Source: Selaginella moellendorffii
Lineage: Eukaryota > Plantae > Lycopodiophyta
Assembly (NCBI RefSeq): GCF_000143415.4
Contig: NW_003314304.1
Location: 192,169 to 256,168, forward strand
DNA length: 64,000 nucleotides
Direction: 5' to 3'
The notes beneath the pieces were generated by a model that was given only the letters and a program-made list of their open reading frames with translations, had not been told where the DNA came from and made no database searches. The position numbers and the translations under genes are program-made. Shown piece by piece: positions 8,132-21,207 of this stretch. The number at the start of each line of letters is the position of its first letter. Position 1 is the stretch's first letter.

Positions 8132-9903
8132 CTAGCTATTGACATTGTTGTTCCTTTGCGCGGCCAGGACGAGAGACATGCCGCTACGACAGACCTGCTC
8201 TATAGCTCTGCCATTTTCCACTGTATCAACTTGTTGCGGGCGGTATCGTGGCCTTTTGGTCTTGCAAAAGAGCCAGTCGAGTCCATTCAGCACCATGAAC
8301 GTACCAATGCCGCCGGTCAAGCCATAAGCAATGGAGTACGTAAGAGGCATGAGGACGATGGTAATGAACGCCGGGATGGCTTCTCTCATGTCATCCCAGT
8401 CAATCTCCTTGACGGACTTCATCATCAAAACTCCGACGAGAACAAGCGCCGGTCCAACTGCCCAAGGTGGAATAGAAGCCAGCAGCGGTGTGAAAAACAG
8501 CGCCAGGAAGAAGTACATCGCCACAGCAAGAGCAGTAATCCCGGTTCTCCCACCTTCTCGGATCCCCGTGGACGACTCGATGAAAGCGGTGACAGGAGAA
8601 GTTCCAAGTGCCGAGCCGACCACGATTGCTGCAGCATCGCTCATGAAGGCCTGGTACTGCCCCTCGAAATCGCCATTCTCGTCGACGAAGCCGGCAAACT
8701 TGGCCATGGAGTAGAGAGTTCCGGTGGTATCCAGTATGTCGACGTAGAGGAAGGTGATGAGCGCCACCCAGAACTGGCTCTTGCCGATTTCAGCAAAGGA
8801 GAGAGCTCCAGCGGTGCCTTTGATGGTGTGAACGTCGACCACCTTGCGGAAGTACGAGTAGGCCGCGTTACCAGCGTCGGTATTTGGGAAGTACGTCACC
8901 TTCGTTCCCCGGAACCAGGAGATGCCGGTGACGAAGACAATGCCGTAGATCATGGCACCTTTGACACCCCTGACGATAGCATACGCGATGATGACGAAGC
9001 CGACGACCCCAAGCCAGAGAGTGGGATCTTCCATCCGGTTACGCGTGCACAGGACGTTAGAGGAGATGGTACCGCCGGGCATGAGACGGGAGACACCGGT
9101 TGTGGTGTTGGTGACAACCGGTGCTACCGCTACTCGGTCCGCTGCCGGGCATCCACCCAGCGTCACCAGAGATGACGGACTGAAGCCGATGAGCCCGACG
9201 CCTTCGCTCGACTGCAAGCCGATTAAGGTGAGGAAGACACCGATACCAGCCGCGCTGGAGATGCGGACGGGGCGGGGGATAGCCTTGGCCAGCCGAGTCC
9301 TGAGGCCGAGTGCTGCCAGCCCGAGAAAGATCAGTCCCTCGACGAACACAGCCGCTAGAGCTCCACCGTAGGAGACACTTCCGGAGCCGTGGAAGCCGAC
9401 GACGGTGTACGCAAAGTAGGCGTTTGCTCCCATCCCAGGCGCCAGCCCGAGCGGGAGATTTGCGAACACTCCCATGATGACACTGCCGATGAGCGAGGAA
9501 GCTGCCGTGGCAACGATGAGATCACGCTTCGTCTGGTCCAGGCAGTCGGAGTATCCTTTGTTCTGGGCCCCTGGATCCTTGCACTCGGCACCTGGCTTGA
9601 CAAGAGTGAGCGGTATACCGCCGGGAGTGAGCCCCGAGCAGCGCTGTGCCGGGATGGTGGCGTTGGAGCAGACCAGTCGGAGATGCCGCAGGGACCGCCA
9701 GAGTGGGTGAGTATGCTGGCGTTCACCGCGAGGATATATGCCATCGTGAGGAAAGTTGCTGTGCCGGCTCTCACCTCTCGAGTGAAGCAAGAGTTTCGCT
9801 CCTCCAGCTTGAAATACCTCCCGACTGTGCTCCGAGCGACTGCCATGTTGAGGTGATCTATGCCTGAGTTCCATTGCTCGCTCAATCCCCTGATAGAATC
9901 CAC
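8132..9903 (-). CDS. AZG1: Adenine/guanine permease AZG1-like (NCS2/AzgA family) with a frameshift near 9674
   Basis: The N-terminal [38 protein letters not shown] lies in ORF 9355-9903. The remainder ([77 protein letters not shown]) lies in ORF 8132-9874. Confidence 0.92.
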
Positions 9904-10703: not shown

Positions 10704-12272
10704 ATGGGGATTCTTTGTTTGCCGCCACCAGCGCCAGACAGGGCGGCCGGCAAGGATTTCGAGGAGGCGGTGGAGCGGCGCTGGAAATGGCTGCAATGCG
10801 TGGAGGATCTGGTGAGGAAGATTGTTCTAGGGGGCGAAGGCCGGATGTGGCTGTGCGCGGCGCTGGGATCTCTTGATTTGCCCCCGGCGGCGCAAAGAGC
10901 TGCGTTTCTAGGGCTCGTCTCGAAAGATGGCGAGGAAGGGCGCAGTATCCGGCAGCGCGTCATCCGGATGCTGTGCGAGAACAGGCCCGCGTGGGCAGCG
11001 AGGGTTCTCGCTCGCGACGATCGACTTCTAAGGCGATTCTTCGAAGGTAAACCATCGAATCTCGCTTCATGGATGTGATTCATGGGTTGCTTGCGCAGGA
11101 GATTCACAGAGAATACTTCAGTGGTTTGGGAAGTTCTCGAGCGGTGGCAACAGCGATCACCAGTGGGGTGCTCGAGCGCTGGCTCGATTTACTTTCGTCC
11201 ATCGTGAATCCTGCTGGCATGAGCTCGATTGGAATGGCAAGCACGGCCAAGCTCCGGCCACGGTCGCGTCAAAGCCACATTACTTCCTCGAGCTTGATGT
11301 GTTGCGAACAGTGGACAACTTCCTCGACAAGGTACCATCCTTTTGGAGGTCTGACGAGCTCTGGGACTCCATGAAGAATGGAGAGTTTTTGAGCCTCGAC
11401 ATCGACTTCTTCATCAACGCGCTTGAGGAGAAGATGATGGTGGACGATTGCCCAGAGACTTGGAATCTCGTGGAAGACTACCTCGCGGAGGAATCGCTGT
11501 CCAAGCTCTCCAACTGCGTGCTCCATCTCCTCTCGGAGGAGAGCCTCTTGACTTTCGTGAACGAGCTCGTCTTCCAGATGAGCAGCAAGGGGCCGAGAAA
11601 GAACGAGAGGAAAGGTGGCGGCCGGGAAAAGCAAAAGACTTGGCTGCAAGAGGTGATTCTATCCGAGGAAAGGTGCCCGACGCTCTACGATGCTATCGTT
11701 TGCAACGCTTGTGCCAACCACAGGAGACAGATAGTGAAGATCGTTGGGGATGAAGACTACGAGGAAGAAACAAAGGTTTTGAAGCGACTACTTGGTGAGG
11801 CCGAGTGTGATCCAGCGGTGGTGTGGGCGGTGAGGAGGCAGAACTTGAAGCTGGATAAGTGGAGTTGCTTGAAGTTCCTGGGGCTGGAAGCACTGATGCT
11901 TTATTGGTATCTCACGGAGAAGAGCGGTCAGATCTCCTATCCTCTTCTATTCAAAGAGAACAGGATACGTTTCGACGCGGCTCCAGTAACCCCGAGGAAG
12001 AGGAAGAAGAGGAAAAGTCGGAAGAGCCGAAAAGATACAGAGGATTCAAGTAATTCTGGCTCTGATGATGGTGAAAGCAGCAGTATGGAGCACAAGTCGT
12101 GGAGATTGTGCACGGACAACTTTCGGTTTTTGTGGAGAAAGGTTTGCGAAACTGTTTTGTTTTTTTTGCTGACAAGATGATTTGCTCGCTCCAATTCCAG
12201 GAAGATCTTCCCGAACATCTCTCTGGTTACGCGTTTGACGAATGGGTCAGGTGGACGGTCGCGCATTGGTAG
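10704..12272 (+). CDS. Conserved plant protein of unknown function (At5g48340-like), 3 exons
   Basis: RRFFEG|DSQRILQWF...GARALARFTFVHRESCWHELDWNGKHGQAPATVASKPHYFLELDVLRTVDNFLDKVPSFW; basic RKRKKRKSRK NLS-like tract; last exon EDLPEHLSGYAFDEWVRW...* with stop ending at 12272. Confidence 0.85.

Positions 12273-15120: not shown

Positions 15121-15157
<37 letters not shown>
15105..15157. repeat. (CT)n-rich microsatellite upstream of the ZF-HD gene
   Basis: ctctcgctcgctctctctcgctctctctct... run seen directly. Confidence 0.9.
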
Positions 15158-15210: not shown

Positions 15211-16400
15211 ATGATGGATGATACGCAAAATGTGGTATGTTCTCCAAGTTTCTTGGATCGTTTGCTTGTTTCCTTGCTTTATCTCTTCTTCTTCTTTGCC
15301 AATTGAATCACAACCCTTAAGAGAAAATTTCGCTTTTGCCACAGCACGAAGATAACAAGGAGTCGCCAAAGCTGCTCGAGACCTCCAACCTTGTTCGCCT
15401 GGATCACCAGCAGCAGCAGCAGCAGCAAAACCTCCACCAGCAGCTCGCCAAATCCATCCAGTTCCACTCCAAAGTCATGGACGTGCTCGTCGCCTACGGC
15501 GCGTGCAAGCGCAACCAAAACCACACCTCCGCCACCCCGGTGCTCGACGGCTGCATGGAATTCTCCTCGAGCTTCAAGGGCGAGCGGAAATGCGAGGCCT
15601 GCGGCTGCCACCGGAGCTTTCACGAGCGGATCATCCTCATGCGCGATCAAAACGGCACGATCAGCTGCGCCTCCCAGATGGTTCCTCCGGAGATCGGAGC
15701 TCCCTTCCAGCGGAAAGAAGCGGATCATCCTTACTTAACAAGCGCCGCGGCCGCGGCCGCCGCCGCCGCCGGCATGATCAACGTAAACTCTAACTCCTCC
15801 GCTGCCGCCAGCAAGCGGAGGAAACTGGACGAGTTTTGCAGCGACGATGGCGGTGGCTACTCGGATCTCATCCGCTCCACCTCGCCGCCATCCTCTGGGG
15901 CGATCATTCTCAACCCGAGCCAGCAGCCACTGCCGCTCCAGAGCCTGGAAGTGATCGATGGCGAGGTCAAGAGCAGCAGTGGCTGGCTGTGCGAGGCCGA
16001 CAAGGAGAAGCTGCTGGGATCGTCCTACAAGAAGATCCACCACCACGGCGACTTGGGCTTCGCCGCGGCCGCCAACCCGGCCGCCCCGCCCGAGAAGCTG
16101 GCCTCGTTCTTCGAGAGGCTCCAGAAGGAGCACCCGGAGTCGCCGCTCAAGCTCGAGTTCGTGGATGGAAGCTGGCGGGTCTTGTGTGGAGTTTGCGCGA
16201 GGTATTTGCGAGCGGACAAGAAGGGGGAGACGCTACACAACATCCAGAAGCAGCACTTCGTCACGCCCAAGCACATAAGCAACCTCAAGGCCAAGCTGGA
16301 AGCTCCCGACGAGATGGAGTTTTGGCTCAAAAGGATGGCCAAGTTGAGGGAGAAGCGAGCGCAGCAGCGAGCACAGCCTCGTTTCATCACTGCTGGGTGA
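15211..16400 (+). CDS. ZF-HD dimerisation-type zinc-finger protein lacking a homeodomain, with a C-terminal C2H2-like finger
   Basis: Exon 1 MMDDTQNV (15211-15234) is spliced to 15345. YGACKRNQ....PVLDGCMEF......KCEACGCHRSFHER matches the ZF-HD motif (Y.EC.KNHA...DGCGEF...CAACGCHRNFHR). Poly-Q and poly-A tracts follow, then the C-terminal WRVLCGVC...QHFVTPKH. Confidence 0.85.
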
Positions 16401-16804: not shown

Positions 16805-17991
16805 CTATACCTCAGGGAAAATGCAGTATTTCTCCTGTTTCATTGTGCCGCCGAAGGCAGGATCAAACTTTAGCTTGTAGAAAGTGGAATTCCGGCAGGC
16901 GACAAGAATGGTATAGGGTTCTTTGCTGCTGAAAGTTACCACGGCGTGGGACTTTGTCTTGAGCTGAAATTGGGCAAACGACCACTGGGAGCTAAAGTAG
17001 CTCGGGAGAACACCTGCATGGACGTGATCAATACTTGTACGACAGTGAAGTTTCCAAGATGATCTTACCTCTCATGAAGGAGAGTGACGAGGTTGGATTC
17101 GTGGCTGTCACTTCGTGATTTGAGGCGGCCGAAGAGTTTGAAGTCGTGGAAGAATCCGGGACGTTTACCTTGAATACGTGAATTGTGCATTTGTCACTGG
17201 TGAGCGCCAGCCAGTGATTGTCCGGAGAAAATGCCATGCTCCAAATCTCGGCTTTGTCTTTGCCTCTTCGAAGCTGGAGAAACCACAAAAAGAAAACTTA
17301 TAAGTTGCCCGTCAACTCTTTCAGGGGACATGTTTCTTACCTCTTGAAGCTTCTCCCCCCAGCCAGTGGAGATCGAGTAGATCTTCACGACCGTCCCCTT
17401 GATGCTCGCAGTGGCGAGGAATCGACCATTCTGGCTGAGTGCCAAGCACGAAAGTGTGTTTGCATGAGCGTTGATCGAGAAGGGATGCCTGTGAGCAGCG
17501 TGAATACGAACCTCGCCCTCCGAGAGCCCCGGAATCGCGAGAACGTATCCGGGACTTAGGGCACACACTCCTCGAAGGTTGCAAGTGGTGACGCTGCGGT
17601 ATATCCTTGAGGTCTCGTTTGCCTTGACGTAAACATGTAGCTCCACCTTGTTTTGCATCACAATCGCCACAGCATCGCCCGAGACCTTGATCGCCAGGAC
17701 TTGAGACGCGCAATTGTACGAGTTTGAGGAGATCCTGCCCTGGACCTCGTCCCAGATCACCACCCTTTTGTTGTCATCCAGTGGGAACTTGCCGCCACCC
17801 AAAAGGAAGAGCCTCAGATTGTCCTCCATCTCAGCGATGGCGAGACCCTTTGCGAGCTTTGGGTTCCTCCCAAAAGCGAGTTTGAGAGGATCACAGTCGT
17901 AAACCTCGACACCATCGTTGCAAGCGCAAACAAAGCGAGTGCTATCGTGATTGAATGCAACGTGTTTGTAGTAATCGTCCTTCTCCCCCAT
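16805..17991 (-). CDS. ATG18: Autophagy-related protein 18 (PROPPIN WD40, LRRG motif), 3 exons
   Basis: AFNHDSTRFVCA...YDCDP, VVIWD, INAHANTLSCLALSQNGRFLATASIKGT, LQE|LRRGKDKAEIWSMAFS, TSDKCTIHVF, SSLSFMRG|VLPSYFSSQWSFAQF...FDPAFGG. Confidence 0.92.
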
Positions 17992-18151
17992 AATCTCCTT
18001 TTTCAAAAGATGTTTCTAGGGCTCCTCCCTTAAATAGAATTATTTAGGCTTAGGGTTTAATATGCCATGTGGATATACGATGGCATTGCTGGCAGTGACG
18101 TGTATAGCAGCGAGGCTTGACATGTGGCGGATGGAGGTTTAGGGTTCTTGG

Positions 18152-21100
18152 ATGCGAAGAAGGGCATTCTTTGCGAGGTTTTTCGCGACAGAGAATCGGG
18201 GCTTTGCGCCGGAGCGATGCCTCAAAGAGGAGATGCTGGGTGTTTACACGCGAGCCAGCGGGCGGCTGGGGGATCTGGAGGGAATGATGGGCGGCGCTGG
18301 GGCGGCGGAGACGGTGGTGCCGTGGACGGCGATGGTGGCCGGTCTTGTTCGCCAAGAGCTCTTCCGCGATGCCATTCTCGTGTTCCGGCAAATGCAGCTC
18401 CAGGGTGTAGCGCCCAACCGCGTGACGATCATGACGGCGCTCACTGCCTGCCTCAATCTCGCGTCCCCGCCGCTGCTCCGCCTCCTCCACTCCATCGCCG
18501 CCGACGCCCAGCTCGCCACCGACATCGCCATCGCCACCTCGCTGCTCAACATCCACGGCAAGATCGGCAGCCTCGCCGCGGCCAAGGAGATCTTCCACTC
18601 CATGGAGATCAAGTCCGTGATCGCCTGGACAGCGATGATGGCCGCGTGCGTCCACCACCGCGAGAATCGAGAGGCGCTCGTGTTCTTCCGGAGAATGCTG
18701 CTGGAACACTCGATCGCCAACACGATCACCTTCGTCACCGTGCTCGGTGCTTGCGGCAATTGCCGCGAGGGGGCATCTGTCCACAAATGGATGATCGAGT
18801 CTGGAATCTCTGCCAGCAGCGTTTTCGCGAGCACCGCGATCGTCACGATGTATGGACGATGCGGTAGCGTGGATCACGCGAAAGAGGTGTTTGATTCAAT
18901 CGCGGAGAAGAATTTCATCTCGGGAACGCTATGGTGGCAGCATTTGCCCAGAACCGGCATTGTGCTCACGCTTTGGCGATGGTGCGCTCCATGGATCTCG
19001 AGGGACTCCACCCCGATCGAGTCACCTGGCTGAGCGTGCTGGGCAGCGTCGCGGAAATCGATCTCCGTGATGGGCGATGGATCCACTCGCGGATCCTGGA
19101 CAGCGGGATCGAGCTGGATTTCGCGCTGGGGACGGCACTGCTCAACATGTACGCCAGGAACCACAGCCTCGAGGAGGCGCTGTGGATCTTTCGCCACGAG
19201 ATGAGCTCGCGGAGCTCGATCTCCTGGAACACAATGCTGGCAGCATCCGCGCACATTGGCGGCGAGGGCGTTTTTCTCGATCTCCTCCGCGAGACGAGGC
19301 TCGAGGGAGTGATTCCGAGCGAGGGGGCGATCGTCGCGTGTCTCGGTGCTTGCGCCAGCACGATCGGGGAGGGAGAGATCGTTCTCTCTCACGCGAAGGA
19401 GCTGGGGATTTGTATGAAGAGAGCTCTTCCAGCTACTGCAGCAGTGACGTTCTTCCGGAGATCTGGGAGGCTGGCGGCGGCGAGAGAGATCTTTGATGGT
19501 GTGGAGGAGGATGAGAGGGATTTGCCGCTGTGGGGGACGATGATCGCCGGCTACGCCGATGATTTCCAGCTCCGCCCCGCGATGGCACTGCTGCGAGGGA
19601 TGCAGCACTGCGGTGTTCTTCCCAGCAAGGTGGTGATCGTCGCCATGATCAACCTCTGCGCGGCAGTGTCGGATCTTCGCCAAGGCGAGATTTTCCGCGC
19701 TTTGTTCGTGGAGTCCTGTGGGATCGATCGAGAAAACTCGGCGGTGGTGGCCAACGCGCTTGTAGATATGTATGGGAAGTGTGGAGCGTTGTCGCTCGCG
19801 AGAAAGCTCTTTCGAGAGATCCCGGAGAAGGACTCGGTGTCTTGGAACTCAATCGTATCAGCGCTTTGCGATCATGGTCGGGGACGAGAGGCTTTGGAGC
19901 TCGTCCGGGAGATGATGCTCGAAGGCATGGCGTCTAGCAGCGTTGGATTCCTCGCGGTGCTGAGCTCCGGATCTCTGGAGCTTCCGGAAGTGAAGACTTT
20001 CGAGGCGATCTTGATGGAGCTCGGCATGGATGAAAACTCTGCCACCTCGCTCGTCACCGGCTATGGGAAGTGTGGAAATTTGGCAGACGCGAGAAGGGTG
20101 TTTGAGGAGACGATGATCGATCACAGGGTGGTGGCGTGGAACTGTTTGATATCGATCCACGCTGAGAACCGCGAGCTCCAGCGAGCTCACAGGACGTTTC
20201 TCGAGATGCTTCTCAGCGGAGTGGCTCCGGAGAGGATCACCTTCATTGTGATCTTGAGCGTTCTGGTGGAGAGCTCCGGACAGGATTTGCGATCGCTGGA
20301 GCTCGTCCGCGCTTGCATTGCCGAGGCCGGCCTGGAGACCGAGCTCGTTGTTGGAAACGCTCTCATCAGCGCGTTTGGAAAGTGCTCCAGCCCCGGCAAC
20401 GCTCGAGAGATCTTCGACGCTATGATCGAGCGCAACAAAGTCTCGTGGACTGCGATCATCGCTGCGTACGCTCACAGCCACCATGGCGCCATCGCCAAGC
20501 TGTTCTTCCGGCGAATGCTGCGCCAAGGCGAAGAGCCCGACCGAGTAACCTTCGCCACCATTCTCTCCACTTGCACCACCGCCGCCGCTCTCGTCGAAGG
20601 CAAGCGCTTCCACGCTCTGCTCGCCGAGCGCCCGGCGATGGAGATGGATCCCGTGGTGGTCTCGGCGCTCATCCACATGTATAGCAAGTGTGGAAGCCTC
20701 GAGTCCGCGAGCAAAGTTTTCGATCGTGGACGGAGCTTCTTGCTGCAAGAGAACTTGCTGGTGTGGACGTCCGTGATCTCGGCCTATGCTCACCACGGCG
20801 ATGGCGAGAGAGCTCTCAAGCTCTTTGCGCGAATGCAGCAGGCTGGATTGCGAGCCGACGGCGTGACGATACTGAGCGTTCTCTCGGCCTGTGCCAAGGC
20901 CGGGATGCTCGAGACCGGGATCCAGTTCTTCGCGTCTATAGCTCGGGATCACTGCCTGGAGGTGACTCTGGAGCACTACAGCTGCTTGGTTGATCTTCTG
21001 GGACGAGCGGGAGAGCTCAGTGCTGCCCAGGAGCTCGTCCGGAGAATCCCCGACGCCAGAGCTTACGTGAGCTTCTTGAGCTCGTGTAGTGTTCAAGGAG

Positions 21101-21207
21101 ATGTTGAGCTGGGAAGAGTGGCGGCGGAGAATGTGAGTGTTTTAGATCCAAGCATCTCCGCTGGCTACGTTGTTCTGTCCAATTTGGTATCAGGGAAACT
21201 GCCATGA
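18152..21207 (+). CDS. PLS-class PPR protein with E domain, 1-nt frameshift near 18921
   Basis: Two consecutive PPR ORFs (18152-19033 and 18931-21207). The junction atctcg-ggaacgct would read ISWNAMVAA if one T were restored. The protein ends with EHYSCLVDLLGRAG...SAGYVVLSNL. Confidence 0.9.

What the first reader, a model, noticed from the sequence alone, without database searches (positions are those of the whole stretch)
15211..16400. ZF-HD finger protein with the homeodomain replaced by a different zinc finger
Known plant architectures are ZHD (ZF-HD finger plus a C-terminal homeodomain with KRFRTKFT and VWMHN) and MIF (finger only, ~100 aa). This ~360-aa protein has the finger but no homeodomain motif. 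It instead ends with RLQKEHPESPLKLEFVDGSWRVLCGVCARYLRADKKGETLHNIQKQHFVTPKHISNL, a CxxC...H-x5-H finger with U1/matrin-like spacing. From memory it resembles the finger at the C-terminus of some fungal Snf5 proteins (WRIKCLDC...GETL.N...HL...H); this is unverified. It may be a third class of ZF-HD protein that dimerises with ZHD factors and redirects them. A basic KRRK NLS-like motif and a ~2 kb upstream non-coding region are consistent with a regulator.
Basis: partly seen in the sequence, partly recalled or inferred. Interest (0 to 1): 0.7.

Follow-up and report, generated by a model that had tools for sequence, protein, structure and literature searches.

The report
ZF-HD finger plus novel zinc module
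A spikemoss (Selaginella) gene joins a slightly altered plant "ZF-HD" dimerisation finger to a second, undescribed zinc-finger module instead of a homeodomain; the same two-part design occurs in one other organism, and ferns carry the second module as small stand-alone proteins.

Summary
The window is Selaginella moellendorffii. The gene has exon 1 at 15211-15234, a 110-nt GT..AG intron, and exon 2 at 15345-16400. It encodes 359 aa, identical to RefSeq "uncharacterized protein LOC112349903".

- **ZF-HD finger:** residues 57-103 match Pfam PF04770 (44.3 bits, cut-off 27). The first signature His is Gln.
- **No homeodomain:** none in the protein, and no homeodomain signature anywhere in the 64-kb window.
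- **C-terminal module:** residues ~258-325 hit no Pfam family. They define a small family with invariant C289, C292, H306, H312, H318 and an HPES motif. Members were found only in Selaginella, ferns (Adiantum, Ceratopteris, Pteridium) and unnamed transcript or metagenome assemblies.
- **Architecture:** most members are 135-210-aa proteins with this module alone. One 202-aa transcript-encoded protein (P0003) has the same fusion and the same His-to-Gln change, so the architecture is conserved.
- **Fold:** the AlphaFold model (pLDDT 76.5) is helix, CxxC hairpin, then His-bearing helices. PDB similarity is weak and U1C/matrin-like. The best shape matches are Basidiomycota proteins, including SNF5-domain proteins (TM 0.62-0.65).

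Verdict: a real, conserved, undescribed variant of the ZF-HD/MIF family. The proposed function, a MIF-like partner of ZHD factors carrying a second binding module, is inferred only.

The parts
15131..15157 (+). (CT)n pyrimidine tract about 55 nt upstream of the start codon, in the likely 5' UTR or core promoter
   Evidence: Read directly from the sequence. Its function was not tested.
15211..15234 (+). Exon 1, 8 codons (MMDDTQNV)
   Evidence: Identical to the N-terminus of RefSeq proteins P0026 and P0001.
15235..15344 (+). Intron, 110 nt, GTATGT...CCACAG
   Evidence: Splicing here reproduces P0026 exactly.
15345..16400 (+). Exon 2, residues 9-359 plus the TGA stop
   Evidence: Exon 2 searched by reference returns P0001 at 99% identity.
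15489..15629 (+). Divergent ZF-HD dimerisation finger (residues 57-103). The ligand positions are C62, Q66 in place of the signature His, C78, C91, C94, C96, H97 and H101.
   Evidence: PF04770 at 44.3 bits against a cut-off of 27. Alignment with the canonical ZHD P0002 and with P0003 shows the His-to-Gln change in both fusion proteins. The 5 Cys + 3 His signature is from PMC10415114.
15630..16076 (+). Low-complexity linker (residues ~104-252) rich in Ala and Ser, with an Ala9 run. It contains the KRRK motif (15813-15824) and His3 (16038-16046).
   Evidence: The single-sequence AlphaFold model has pLDDT below 50 across 119-254. The linker is not conserved in P0003, where it is about 50 aa.
16092..16373 (+). 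Conserved C-terminal zinc module (residues 258-351): helix 1 (KLASFFERLQKEHPES), a beta-hairpin ending in C289-x2-C292, then helices carrying H306, H312 and H318, then a basic coiled helix
   Evidence: Family alignments A1 and A3 show C, C, three His and HPES invariant among the fern and lycophyte members. AlphaFold with A3 gives pLDDT 76.5 and pTM 0.63. The exhaustive HMMER search found the relatives.

Best explanation
This is an intact, annotated but uncharacterised Selaginella gene for a two-module zinc protein. Module 1 is a divergent ZF-HD dimerisation finger in which Gln replaces the first signature His. Module 2 replaces the homeodomain of ZHD factors. It is a roughly 70-residue CCHH zinc module: an amphipathic helix ending in HPES, a beta-hairpin with a CxxC knuckle, and His-bearing helices. 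The pattern is most like an extended U1C-type C2H2 finger, C-x2-C-x19-H-x5-H. A disordered linker with basic KRRK-type motifs joins the two modules.

Module 2 is an independent family found in ferns and lycophytes. In Selaginella and in at least one further organism it is fused to the finger. Both fusion proteins share the same derived finger features, which points to one old fusion kept by selection.

The inferred mechanism is untested. Like MIF microproteins, the protein would pair through its finger with itself or with homeodomain-bearing ZHD factors. Having no homeodomain, it would not bind ZHD target DNA. It would instead bring module 2, a nucleic-acid- or protein-binding finger, to the complex.
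For: Shown here:
- Gene model and identity with RefSeq LOC112349903.
- PF04770 above its threshold in both P0001 and P0003.
- No homeodomain in the protein, and no homeodomain helix-3 signature in the whole window on either strand. The next downstream gene is a convergent PROPPIN gene.
- Module 2 relatives at E 1e-17 to 1e-20 and about 50% identity in an exhaustive search of 1.84 billion representatives. The only named sources are ferns and Selaginella.
- 28 invariant columns in alignment A1, including both Cys and all three His.
- P0003 is a complete 202-aa ORF with an in-frame stop 24 nt upstream. It is present in contigs from several runs with alternative 5' ends, so it is transcribed.
- P0001 and P0003 align in both modules (53% and 51% identity) but not in the linker. 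Both have C-x-[KR]-N-Q-N at the signature His position.
- The same runs also hold a protein with module 2 alone, P0005.
- The model of module 2 has pLDDT 76.5.
- The A3 profile aligns C289, C292, H312 and H318 with the CCHH ligands of U1C. Spliceosomal and TUT U1/matrin-type fingers recur among the weak structural matches. CCDC84/CENATAC scores sub-threshold in 7 of 12 family members.

From the literature: ZF-HD fingers mediate dimerisation, and MIFs inhibit ZHDs through this finger (PMC3020774 abstract; PMC10415114).
Against: - No functional data exist.
- The finger lacks one of its eight signature ligands, so zinc binding or dimerisation may be altered or lost.
- All PDB fold matches are weak (Z <= 5.3, Foldseek E >= 0.7). 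No U1, matrin or BED Pfam model hits the Selaginella module.
- The Cys-to-His spacing is 5 residues longer than in U1C. Which two of the three invariant His bind zinc is unresolved.
- Most family members work without a ZF-HD finger, so the main function may have nothing to do with ZHD factors.
- The organism that encodes P0003 is unknown.
Confidence: 0.55

Rival explanations
1. The working part is the C-terminal module, which acts as an RNA-, DNA- or partner-binding finger in its own pathway, as in the stand-alone fern proteins. The ZF-HD-like finger is a degenerate add-on that at most homodimerises the protein and has no cross-talk with ZHD factors.
For: Eight of the ten family clusters are 135-210-aa proteins with module 2 alone. 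The finger has lost a signature His in both fusion proteins. Module 2 is basic, with 20 K/R against 13 D/E.
Against: The finger is as well conserved between P0001 and P0003 (53% identity) as module 2 (51%), while the linker is not conserved. A decaying add-on would not behave this way. It still scores well above the PF04770 threshold.
Confidence: 0.28
2. Module 2 is a domesticated transposon-type DNA-binding finger, BED-like or similar, so the protein is a DNA-binding factor of a new kind rather than a MIF-like inhibitor.
For: - The most distant relative, P0011 from a TARA ocean metagenome, carries two tandem copies. One hits zf-BED weakly (E 0.013-0.15).
- P0011 sits next to a gene with a weak TNP-like RNase H hit (E 0.0021, below threshold).
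- The protein atlas lists zf-BED clusters at 0.78-0.79 by features and TM 0.45 by shape.
- The C-x2-C-x19-H-x5-H spacing falls within the range I recall for BED fingers (from memory, not tested here).
Against: All these scores lie in ranges the tools themselves call chance-level. No fern or lycophyte member hits zf-BED. No transposon context surrounds the window gene, whose neighbours are a PROPPIN gene and a PPR gene, with a permease gene further upstream.
Confidence: 0.1
3. The locus is an annotation artefact or a decaying ZHD gene. The true gene would have a homeodomain exon that was missed, or the C-terminus is a meaningless read-through.
For: RNA evidence from Selaginella itself could not be obtained.
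Against: - There is no homeodomain signature anywhere in the window.
- Only stop-rich AT-rich sequence lies between the stop codon and the convergent PROPPIN gene.
- Both haplotype copies keep the full ORF.
- The C-terminus is conserved at about 50% identity in ferns.
- P0003 transcripts end at the equivalent position.
Confidence: 0.03

Closest known systems
MIF (mini zinc finger) proteins of the ZF-HD family
   Same: Has a PF04770 ZF-HD dimerisation finger and no homeodomain. By the operational definition in PMC10415114 (a gene with only the ZF-dimer domain in Pfam) it would be counted as a MIF.
   Different: It is 359 aa rather than about 100 aa. It carries a second conserved zinc module that Pfam does not model, and its finger has Gln at the first signature His. 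It comes from a lycophyte. Whether its finger belongs to the MIF-I or MIF-Z/ZHD lineage could not be tested.
ZHD (zinc finger-homeodomain) transcription factors, e.g. P0002 from Dioscorea
   Same: Finger at the N-terminal side, a variable linker, then a C-terminal binding domain. The rest of the finger pattern is kept: C-x15-C-x12-C-x2-C-x-C-H-x3-H.
   Different: There is no homeodomain (no KRFRTKFT or VWMHN motif, no Pfam hit). The C-terminal domain is a CCHH zinc module instead.
U1C-type / matrin-type C2H2 zinc fingers (U1C, SF3A2/Prp11, TUT1, TUT4, CENATAC)
   Same: A CxxC knuckle in a beta-hairpin, followed by a helix with H-x5-H and a [ST]-x-[KR]-H ending. A profile alignment to U1C matches all four ligands. 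These fingers recur among the weak structural matches.
   Different: The similarity is not significant (E 0.18; Z 3-4). There is a 5-residue insert between the Cys and His halves, an extra invariant His, and an N-terminal helix with an HPES motif that packs on the hairpin. No Pfam zf-U1, zf-met or jaz hit was found.
Unnamed domain in Basidiomycota proteins, including the C-terminal part of SNF5-domain proteins (ESM Atlas clusters)
   Same: These are the best shape matches found: TM 0.62-0.65 normalised by the query, rmsd 2.0-2.1 A over 74-76 of 99 residues. The top language-model feature hits are also fungal clusters, at 0.92 and 0.88.
   Different: No sequence-level link was found at E<=1e-3 in the exhaustive single-sequence search. 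The fungal sequences could not be retrieved for alignment. The tool itself warns that a TM above 0.5 means little for short domains.
ZnF-UBP (BUZ) domain, last hairpin (USP16)
   Same: Local motif of the type HP-L-x-L...W-x-V-W-C-x-x-C. The A3 profile hits USP16 residues 107-175 at E 0.0056.
   Different: Only the final hairpin is shared. The other zinc ligands of a ZnF-UBP domain are absent, and no Pfam zf-UBP hit was found.

Membership tests
ZF-HD family (PF04770 ZF-HD_dimer) | Match to the Pfam model above its gathering score | tested here: met
   44.3 bits against 27, E 2.3e-11, covering profile positions 2-52 of 55. P0003 scores 47.3 bits.
ZF-HD family (PF04770 ZF-HD_dimer) | Signature of five Cys and three His (PMC10415114) | tested here: not met
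   Five Cys are present (C62, C78, C91, C94, C96) but only two His (H97, H101). The C-x3-H histidine is Gln66, and the same is true in P0003. The canonical ZHD P0002 has His there.
ZHD subclass | C-terminal ZF-HD-type homeodomain | tested here: not met
   No homeobox family in Pfam at E<=1. No W[FM][QHK]N, VWMHN or FRTKF motif in any frame of the 64-kb window.
MIF subclass | Small protein consisting of the ZF-dimer only | tested here: inconclusive
   Formally, no other Pfam domain is present. However, the protein is 359 aa and has a second domain conserved at about 50% identity in ferns.
ZF-HD family | Finger mediates homo- or heterodimerisation with ZHD proteins | not testable with these tools
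   Needs yeast two-hybrid, BiFC or pull-down experiments.
U1C/matrin-type C2H2 zinc finger | C-x2-C ... H-x5/6-H ligand set, conserved | tested here: met
   C289, C292, H312 and H318 are invariant among the fern and lycophyte members and align with the U1C ligands.
U1C/matrin-type C2H2 zinc finger | Significant match to a Pfam or PDB member | tested here: not met
   No zf-U1, zf-met or jaz hit at E<=10. U1C scores E 0.18. Structural Z is at most about 4.
BED finger | Match to PF02892 | tested here: not met
   Only the distant P0011 hits, at E 0.013-0.15 and below the cut-off. None of the plant members hit.
Fungal SNF5-associated C-terminal domain (unnamed) | Same fold and detectable sequence homology | tested here: inconclusive
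   Fold-level TM is 0.62-0.65, but there is no sequence hit. The fungal sequences were not retrievable.

The most novel reading that the evidence does not exclude
Vascular plants ancestrally had a third ZF-HD class in which the dimerisation finger is coupled to a fungal-type, SNF5-associated zinc module rather than to a homeodomain. In this reading the class links ZHD complexes to chromatin remodelling or RNA, survives only in lycophytes and possibly ferns, and was lost in seed plants. Module 2 would be a new zinc-finger family shared by fungi, ferns and lycophytes.
Probability: 0.15. Interest if true: 0.7.

Novelty: new variant of a known kind. Interest (0 to 1): 0.5.

Why it matters
ZF-HD genes are currently sorted into ZHD (finger plus homeodomain) and MIF (finger only), and the origin of the two is debated (PMC10415114). 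This protein shows that Pfam-only classification hides a conserved third architecture in seed-free vascular plants. It also brings to light an undescribed zinc-binding domain family, annotated only as 'hypothetical protein' in fern genomes. If the finger still pairs with ZHD factors, the protein would be a natural example of a microprotein-like inhibitor that carries an effector domain. If the fungal SNF5 link is real, it would connect this plant-specific family to chromatin remodelling. The scope is niche, and everything about function is still inference.

Tried and rejected
- **Single-sequence AlphaFold of the whole protein:** pLDDT 41.8, unusable.
- **phmmer and A1 profile against PDB for module 2:** only chance-level matches, E >= 0.13, or none.
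- **Foldseek against PDB:** no match with E <= 0.001.
- **VIA-align wide and second look:** Z <= 5.3. The top rows (EcoRI, CadC) are unrelated folds at noise level.
- **Word-indexed search with the finger of P0003:** found only itself, so the closest ZF-HD fingers, and the MIF-I versus MIF-Z/ZHD placement, could not be determined.
- **Maximum-likelihood tree of module 2:** unresolved apart from the Adiantum pair, with no starred branches. It cannot say whether the two fused proteins are sisters.
- **Literature search for the run accessions behind P0003, P0007 and P0012:** no paper found, so those organisms stay unidentified.
- **Metagenome scan:** one more fern-like gene with module 2 alone (L015), and one GC-rich bacterial-looking contig (L016) that I reject as a chance pattern match, 37 residues in an unrelated ORF.
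- **P0009 (6524 aa, 17 short stretches) and P0010 (TPR protein):** rejected as repeat or low-complexity artefacts.
- **DARPin hits to the finger region:** chance similarity to the ankyrin consensus just before the finger.
- **Handling of the spliced model:** the joined two-exon model was never sent to a search tool. Searches used exon 2 by reference and the database proteins P0001 and P0026. A local script joined the exons only to translate them and compare with P0001.

Full report
**Observation.** The window is Selaginella moellendorffii: exon 2 searched by reference returns XP_024517117.1 (P0001, LOC112341377) at 99% identity.

The gene has three parts:
- exon 1 at 15211-15234 (MMDDTQNV)
- a 110-nt intron at 15235-15344 (GTATGT...CCACAG)
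- exon 2 at 15345-16400, ending in TGA

Its 359-aa product is letter-for-letter P0026 (XP_024540920.1/XP_024540921.1, LOC112349903, 'uncharacterized protein'). P0001 differs by one substitution (N12S) and by the lengths of the poly-Gln run (one residue, with an adjacent His/Gln difference) and the poly-Ala run (two residues). It is presumably the other haplotype. An older 51-aa model, P0025, covers only the finger.

The joined model was not sent to any search tool. Searches used exon 2 by reference or the database proteins, and the exons were joined only in a local script to translate and compare.

**ZF-HD finger.** Pfam PF04770 matches residues 57-103 with 44.3 bits against a gathering score of 27 (E 2.3e-11). 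Nothing else in Pfam reaches E<=1 apart from noise, and there is no homeobox family.

The literature gives five Cys and three His as the signature of this domain (PMC10415114). Aligned with a canonical ZHD (P0002, Dioscorea), the Selaginella finger keeps all five Cys and the C-H-x3-H end. The C-x3-H histidine, however, is Gln66 (C-K-R-N-Q).

**No hidden homeodomain.**
- The 3' flank (16400 to about 17000) is AT-rich and full of stops in all three frames.
- The next gene is a convergent PROPPIN/WD40 gene on the minus strand (17197-18006), followed by a PPR gene.
- No homeodomain helix-3 signature (W[FM][QHK]N, VWMHN, FRTKF) exists in any frame of the whole 64-kb window.
- Both RefSeq models stop at the same codon.

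**The C-terminal module is a family of its own.** An exhaustive HMMER search of 1.84 billion representative proteins used the last 126 residues as query. Beyond P0001 itself it found six clusters at E 1e-17 to 1e-20 and about 50% identity, plus one distant relative (P0011, E 7.6e-4) and two artefacts. A word-indexed profile search added three more.

Named sources:
- Adiantum capillus-veneris (KAI5071850)
- A. nelumboides
- Ceratopteris richardii (KAH7437506; a 522-nt intronless gene)
- Pteridium aquilinum (EukProt)

The rest are Logan transcript assemblies or metagenome contigs. One of these is a 3.5-kb low-coverage contig with a fern-like copy (L015). No seed plant, bryophyte or alga appears at this sensitivity.

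Alignment A1 (10 sequences) has 28 invariant columns. In window-protein numbering they include H271-P-E-S, W285, C289, C292, H306-N-I, H312-F and H318.

**The architecture is conserved.** Most family members are 135-210-aa proteins with no Cys-rich N-terminus. P0003 (202 aa) is different:
- It begins with a PF04770 finger (47.3 bits) and ends with the module.
- It aligns with the Selaginella protein in the finger (28/53 identical) and in the module (46/91), but not in the linker.
- Its ORF is closed by an in-frame stop 24 nt upstream.
- It occurs in contigs from at least four runs that diverge at a common point upstream of the ORF, as expected of alternatively spliced transcripts.
- It has the same His-to-Gln replacement and the same C-x-[KR]-N-Q-N context.

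This shared derived character argues for a single origin of the fusion. The same runs also hold a protein with the module alone, P0005. The organism is unknown because no paper cites the runs. A tree of the roughly 95-column module is unresolved.

**Fold of the module.** With alignment A3, AlphaFold gives pLDDT 76.5 and pTM 0.63. The model runs helix 6-18, strands 24-29 and 32-37 (ending at the first Cys), strand 42-44, then helices 53-61, 64-75 and 77-98.

PDB comparisons:
- Foldseek finds nothing.
- VIA-align gives only Z <= 5.3. Among unrelated rows, U1/matrin-type fingers of spliceosomal SF3A2/Prp11, TUT1 and TUT4 recur at Z 3-4, which the tool rates as within noise.
- The A3 profile hits USP16's ZnF-UBP last hairpin (E 0.0056).
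- The A3 profile also hits U1C (E 0.18). This alignment puts C289, C292, H312 and H318 on U1C's four ligands and leaves H306 in a 5-residue insert.

Other leads:
- P0011's first repeat keeps exactly the H312 and H318 equivalents.
- Seven of 12 members score sub-threshold on Pfam CCDC84, the family of CENATAC, which has two N-terminal C2H2 fingers (PMC8280824).
- The best shape matches are ESM-Atlas clusters from Basidiomycota: TM 0.62-0.65, rmsd 2.0-2.1 A over 74-76 residues. In one of them every member carries the SNF5 domain.
- The top language-model feature hits are fungal too, at 0.92.

BED-finger leads are all chance-level.

**Interpretation.** Shown: this is a real, intact, annotated but uncharacterised gene with a divergent ZF-HD finger, a disordered linker and a conserved CCHH zinc module. 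The module is a fern and lycophyte family without a Pfam model. The fusion is shared with at least one other organism.

Inferred: the finger still mediates pairing, as in MIF and ZHD proteins. The protein therefore acts as a MIF-like partner that brings a second binding module. The ligands are C289, C292, H312 and H318.

The main rival is that the module acts in a pathway unrelated to ZHDs, with the finger only self-associating. I found no description of this architecture. PMC10415114 sorts 90% of ZF-HD genes into ZHD or MIF by Pfam/InterPro content, and by that rule this gene would be logged as a MIF. An earlier tomato study counted seven Selaginella ZF-HD genes without describing architectures.

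**Verdict.** This is a new variant of a known kind, of moderate interest.

Noticed in passing
window 15408-15428 and 15744-15770: The poly-Gln and poly-Ala tracts differ in length between the two RefSeq copies, along with one N/S substitution. The two copies are LOC112349903 (this window, 359 aa) and LOC112341377 (358 aa). This looks like haplotype polymorphism in coding microsatellites.
   Followed up: partly
window 15489-15629 (protein P0025): A 51-aa database protein consisting of the finger alone (MDVLVAY...FHER) exists for this locus on two contigs. It is probably an older gene model. Family surveys built on it would have seen a 'mini' finger and missed the C-terminal module.
   Followed up: no
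window 17197-18006 (-), 18931-21204 (+), 8135-9874 (-): These are large ORFs with ordinary plant domains near the gene. They are a PROPPIN/WD40 (ATG18/WIPI-like) exon, an intronless 758-aa PPR protein, and a xanthine/uracil permease family ORF.
   Followed up: partly
window 11299-12177 (+): A 293-aa GC-rich ORF starting with GTG has no Pfam hit. It may be the shadow of a gene on the other strand or an unannotated exon.
   Followed up: no
L013:2011-2592 and L014:1869-2450 (TARA/ENA marine metagenome contigs): P0011 is a 193-aa protein with two tandem copies of a distantly related finger. It lies in a densely packed, same-strand gene row next to a 374-aa protein with a weak TNP-like RNase H hit (E 0.0021). 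This may be a transposon or viral context for the oldest relatives of the module.
   Followed up: partly
L001-L004 (Logan contigs of SRR32617114-129): Transcripts for P0003 share the ORF but diverge at a common point upstream of it. L001 carries about 1 kb of extra GC-rich upstream sequence with a called 78-aa ORF. This suggests alternative 5' exons or a retained intron.
   Followed up: no
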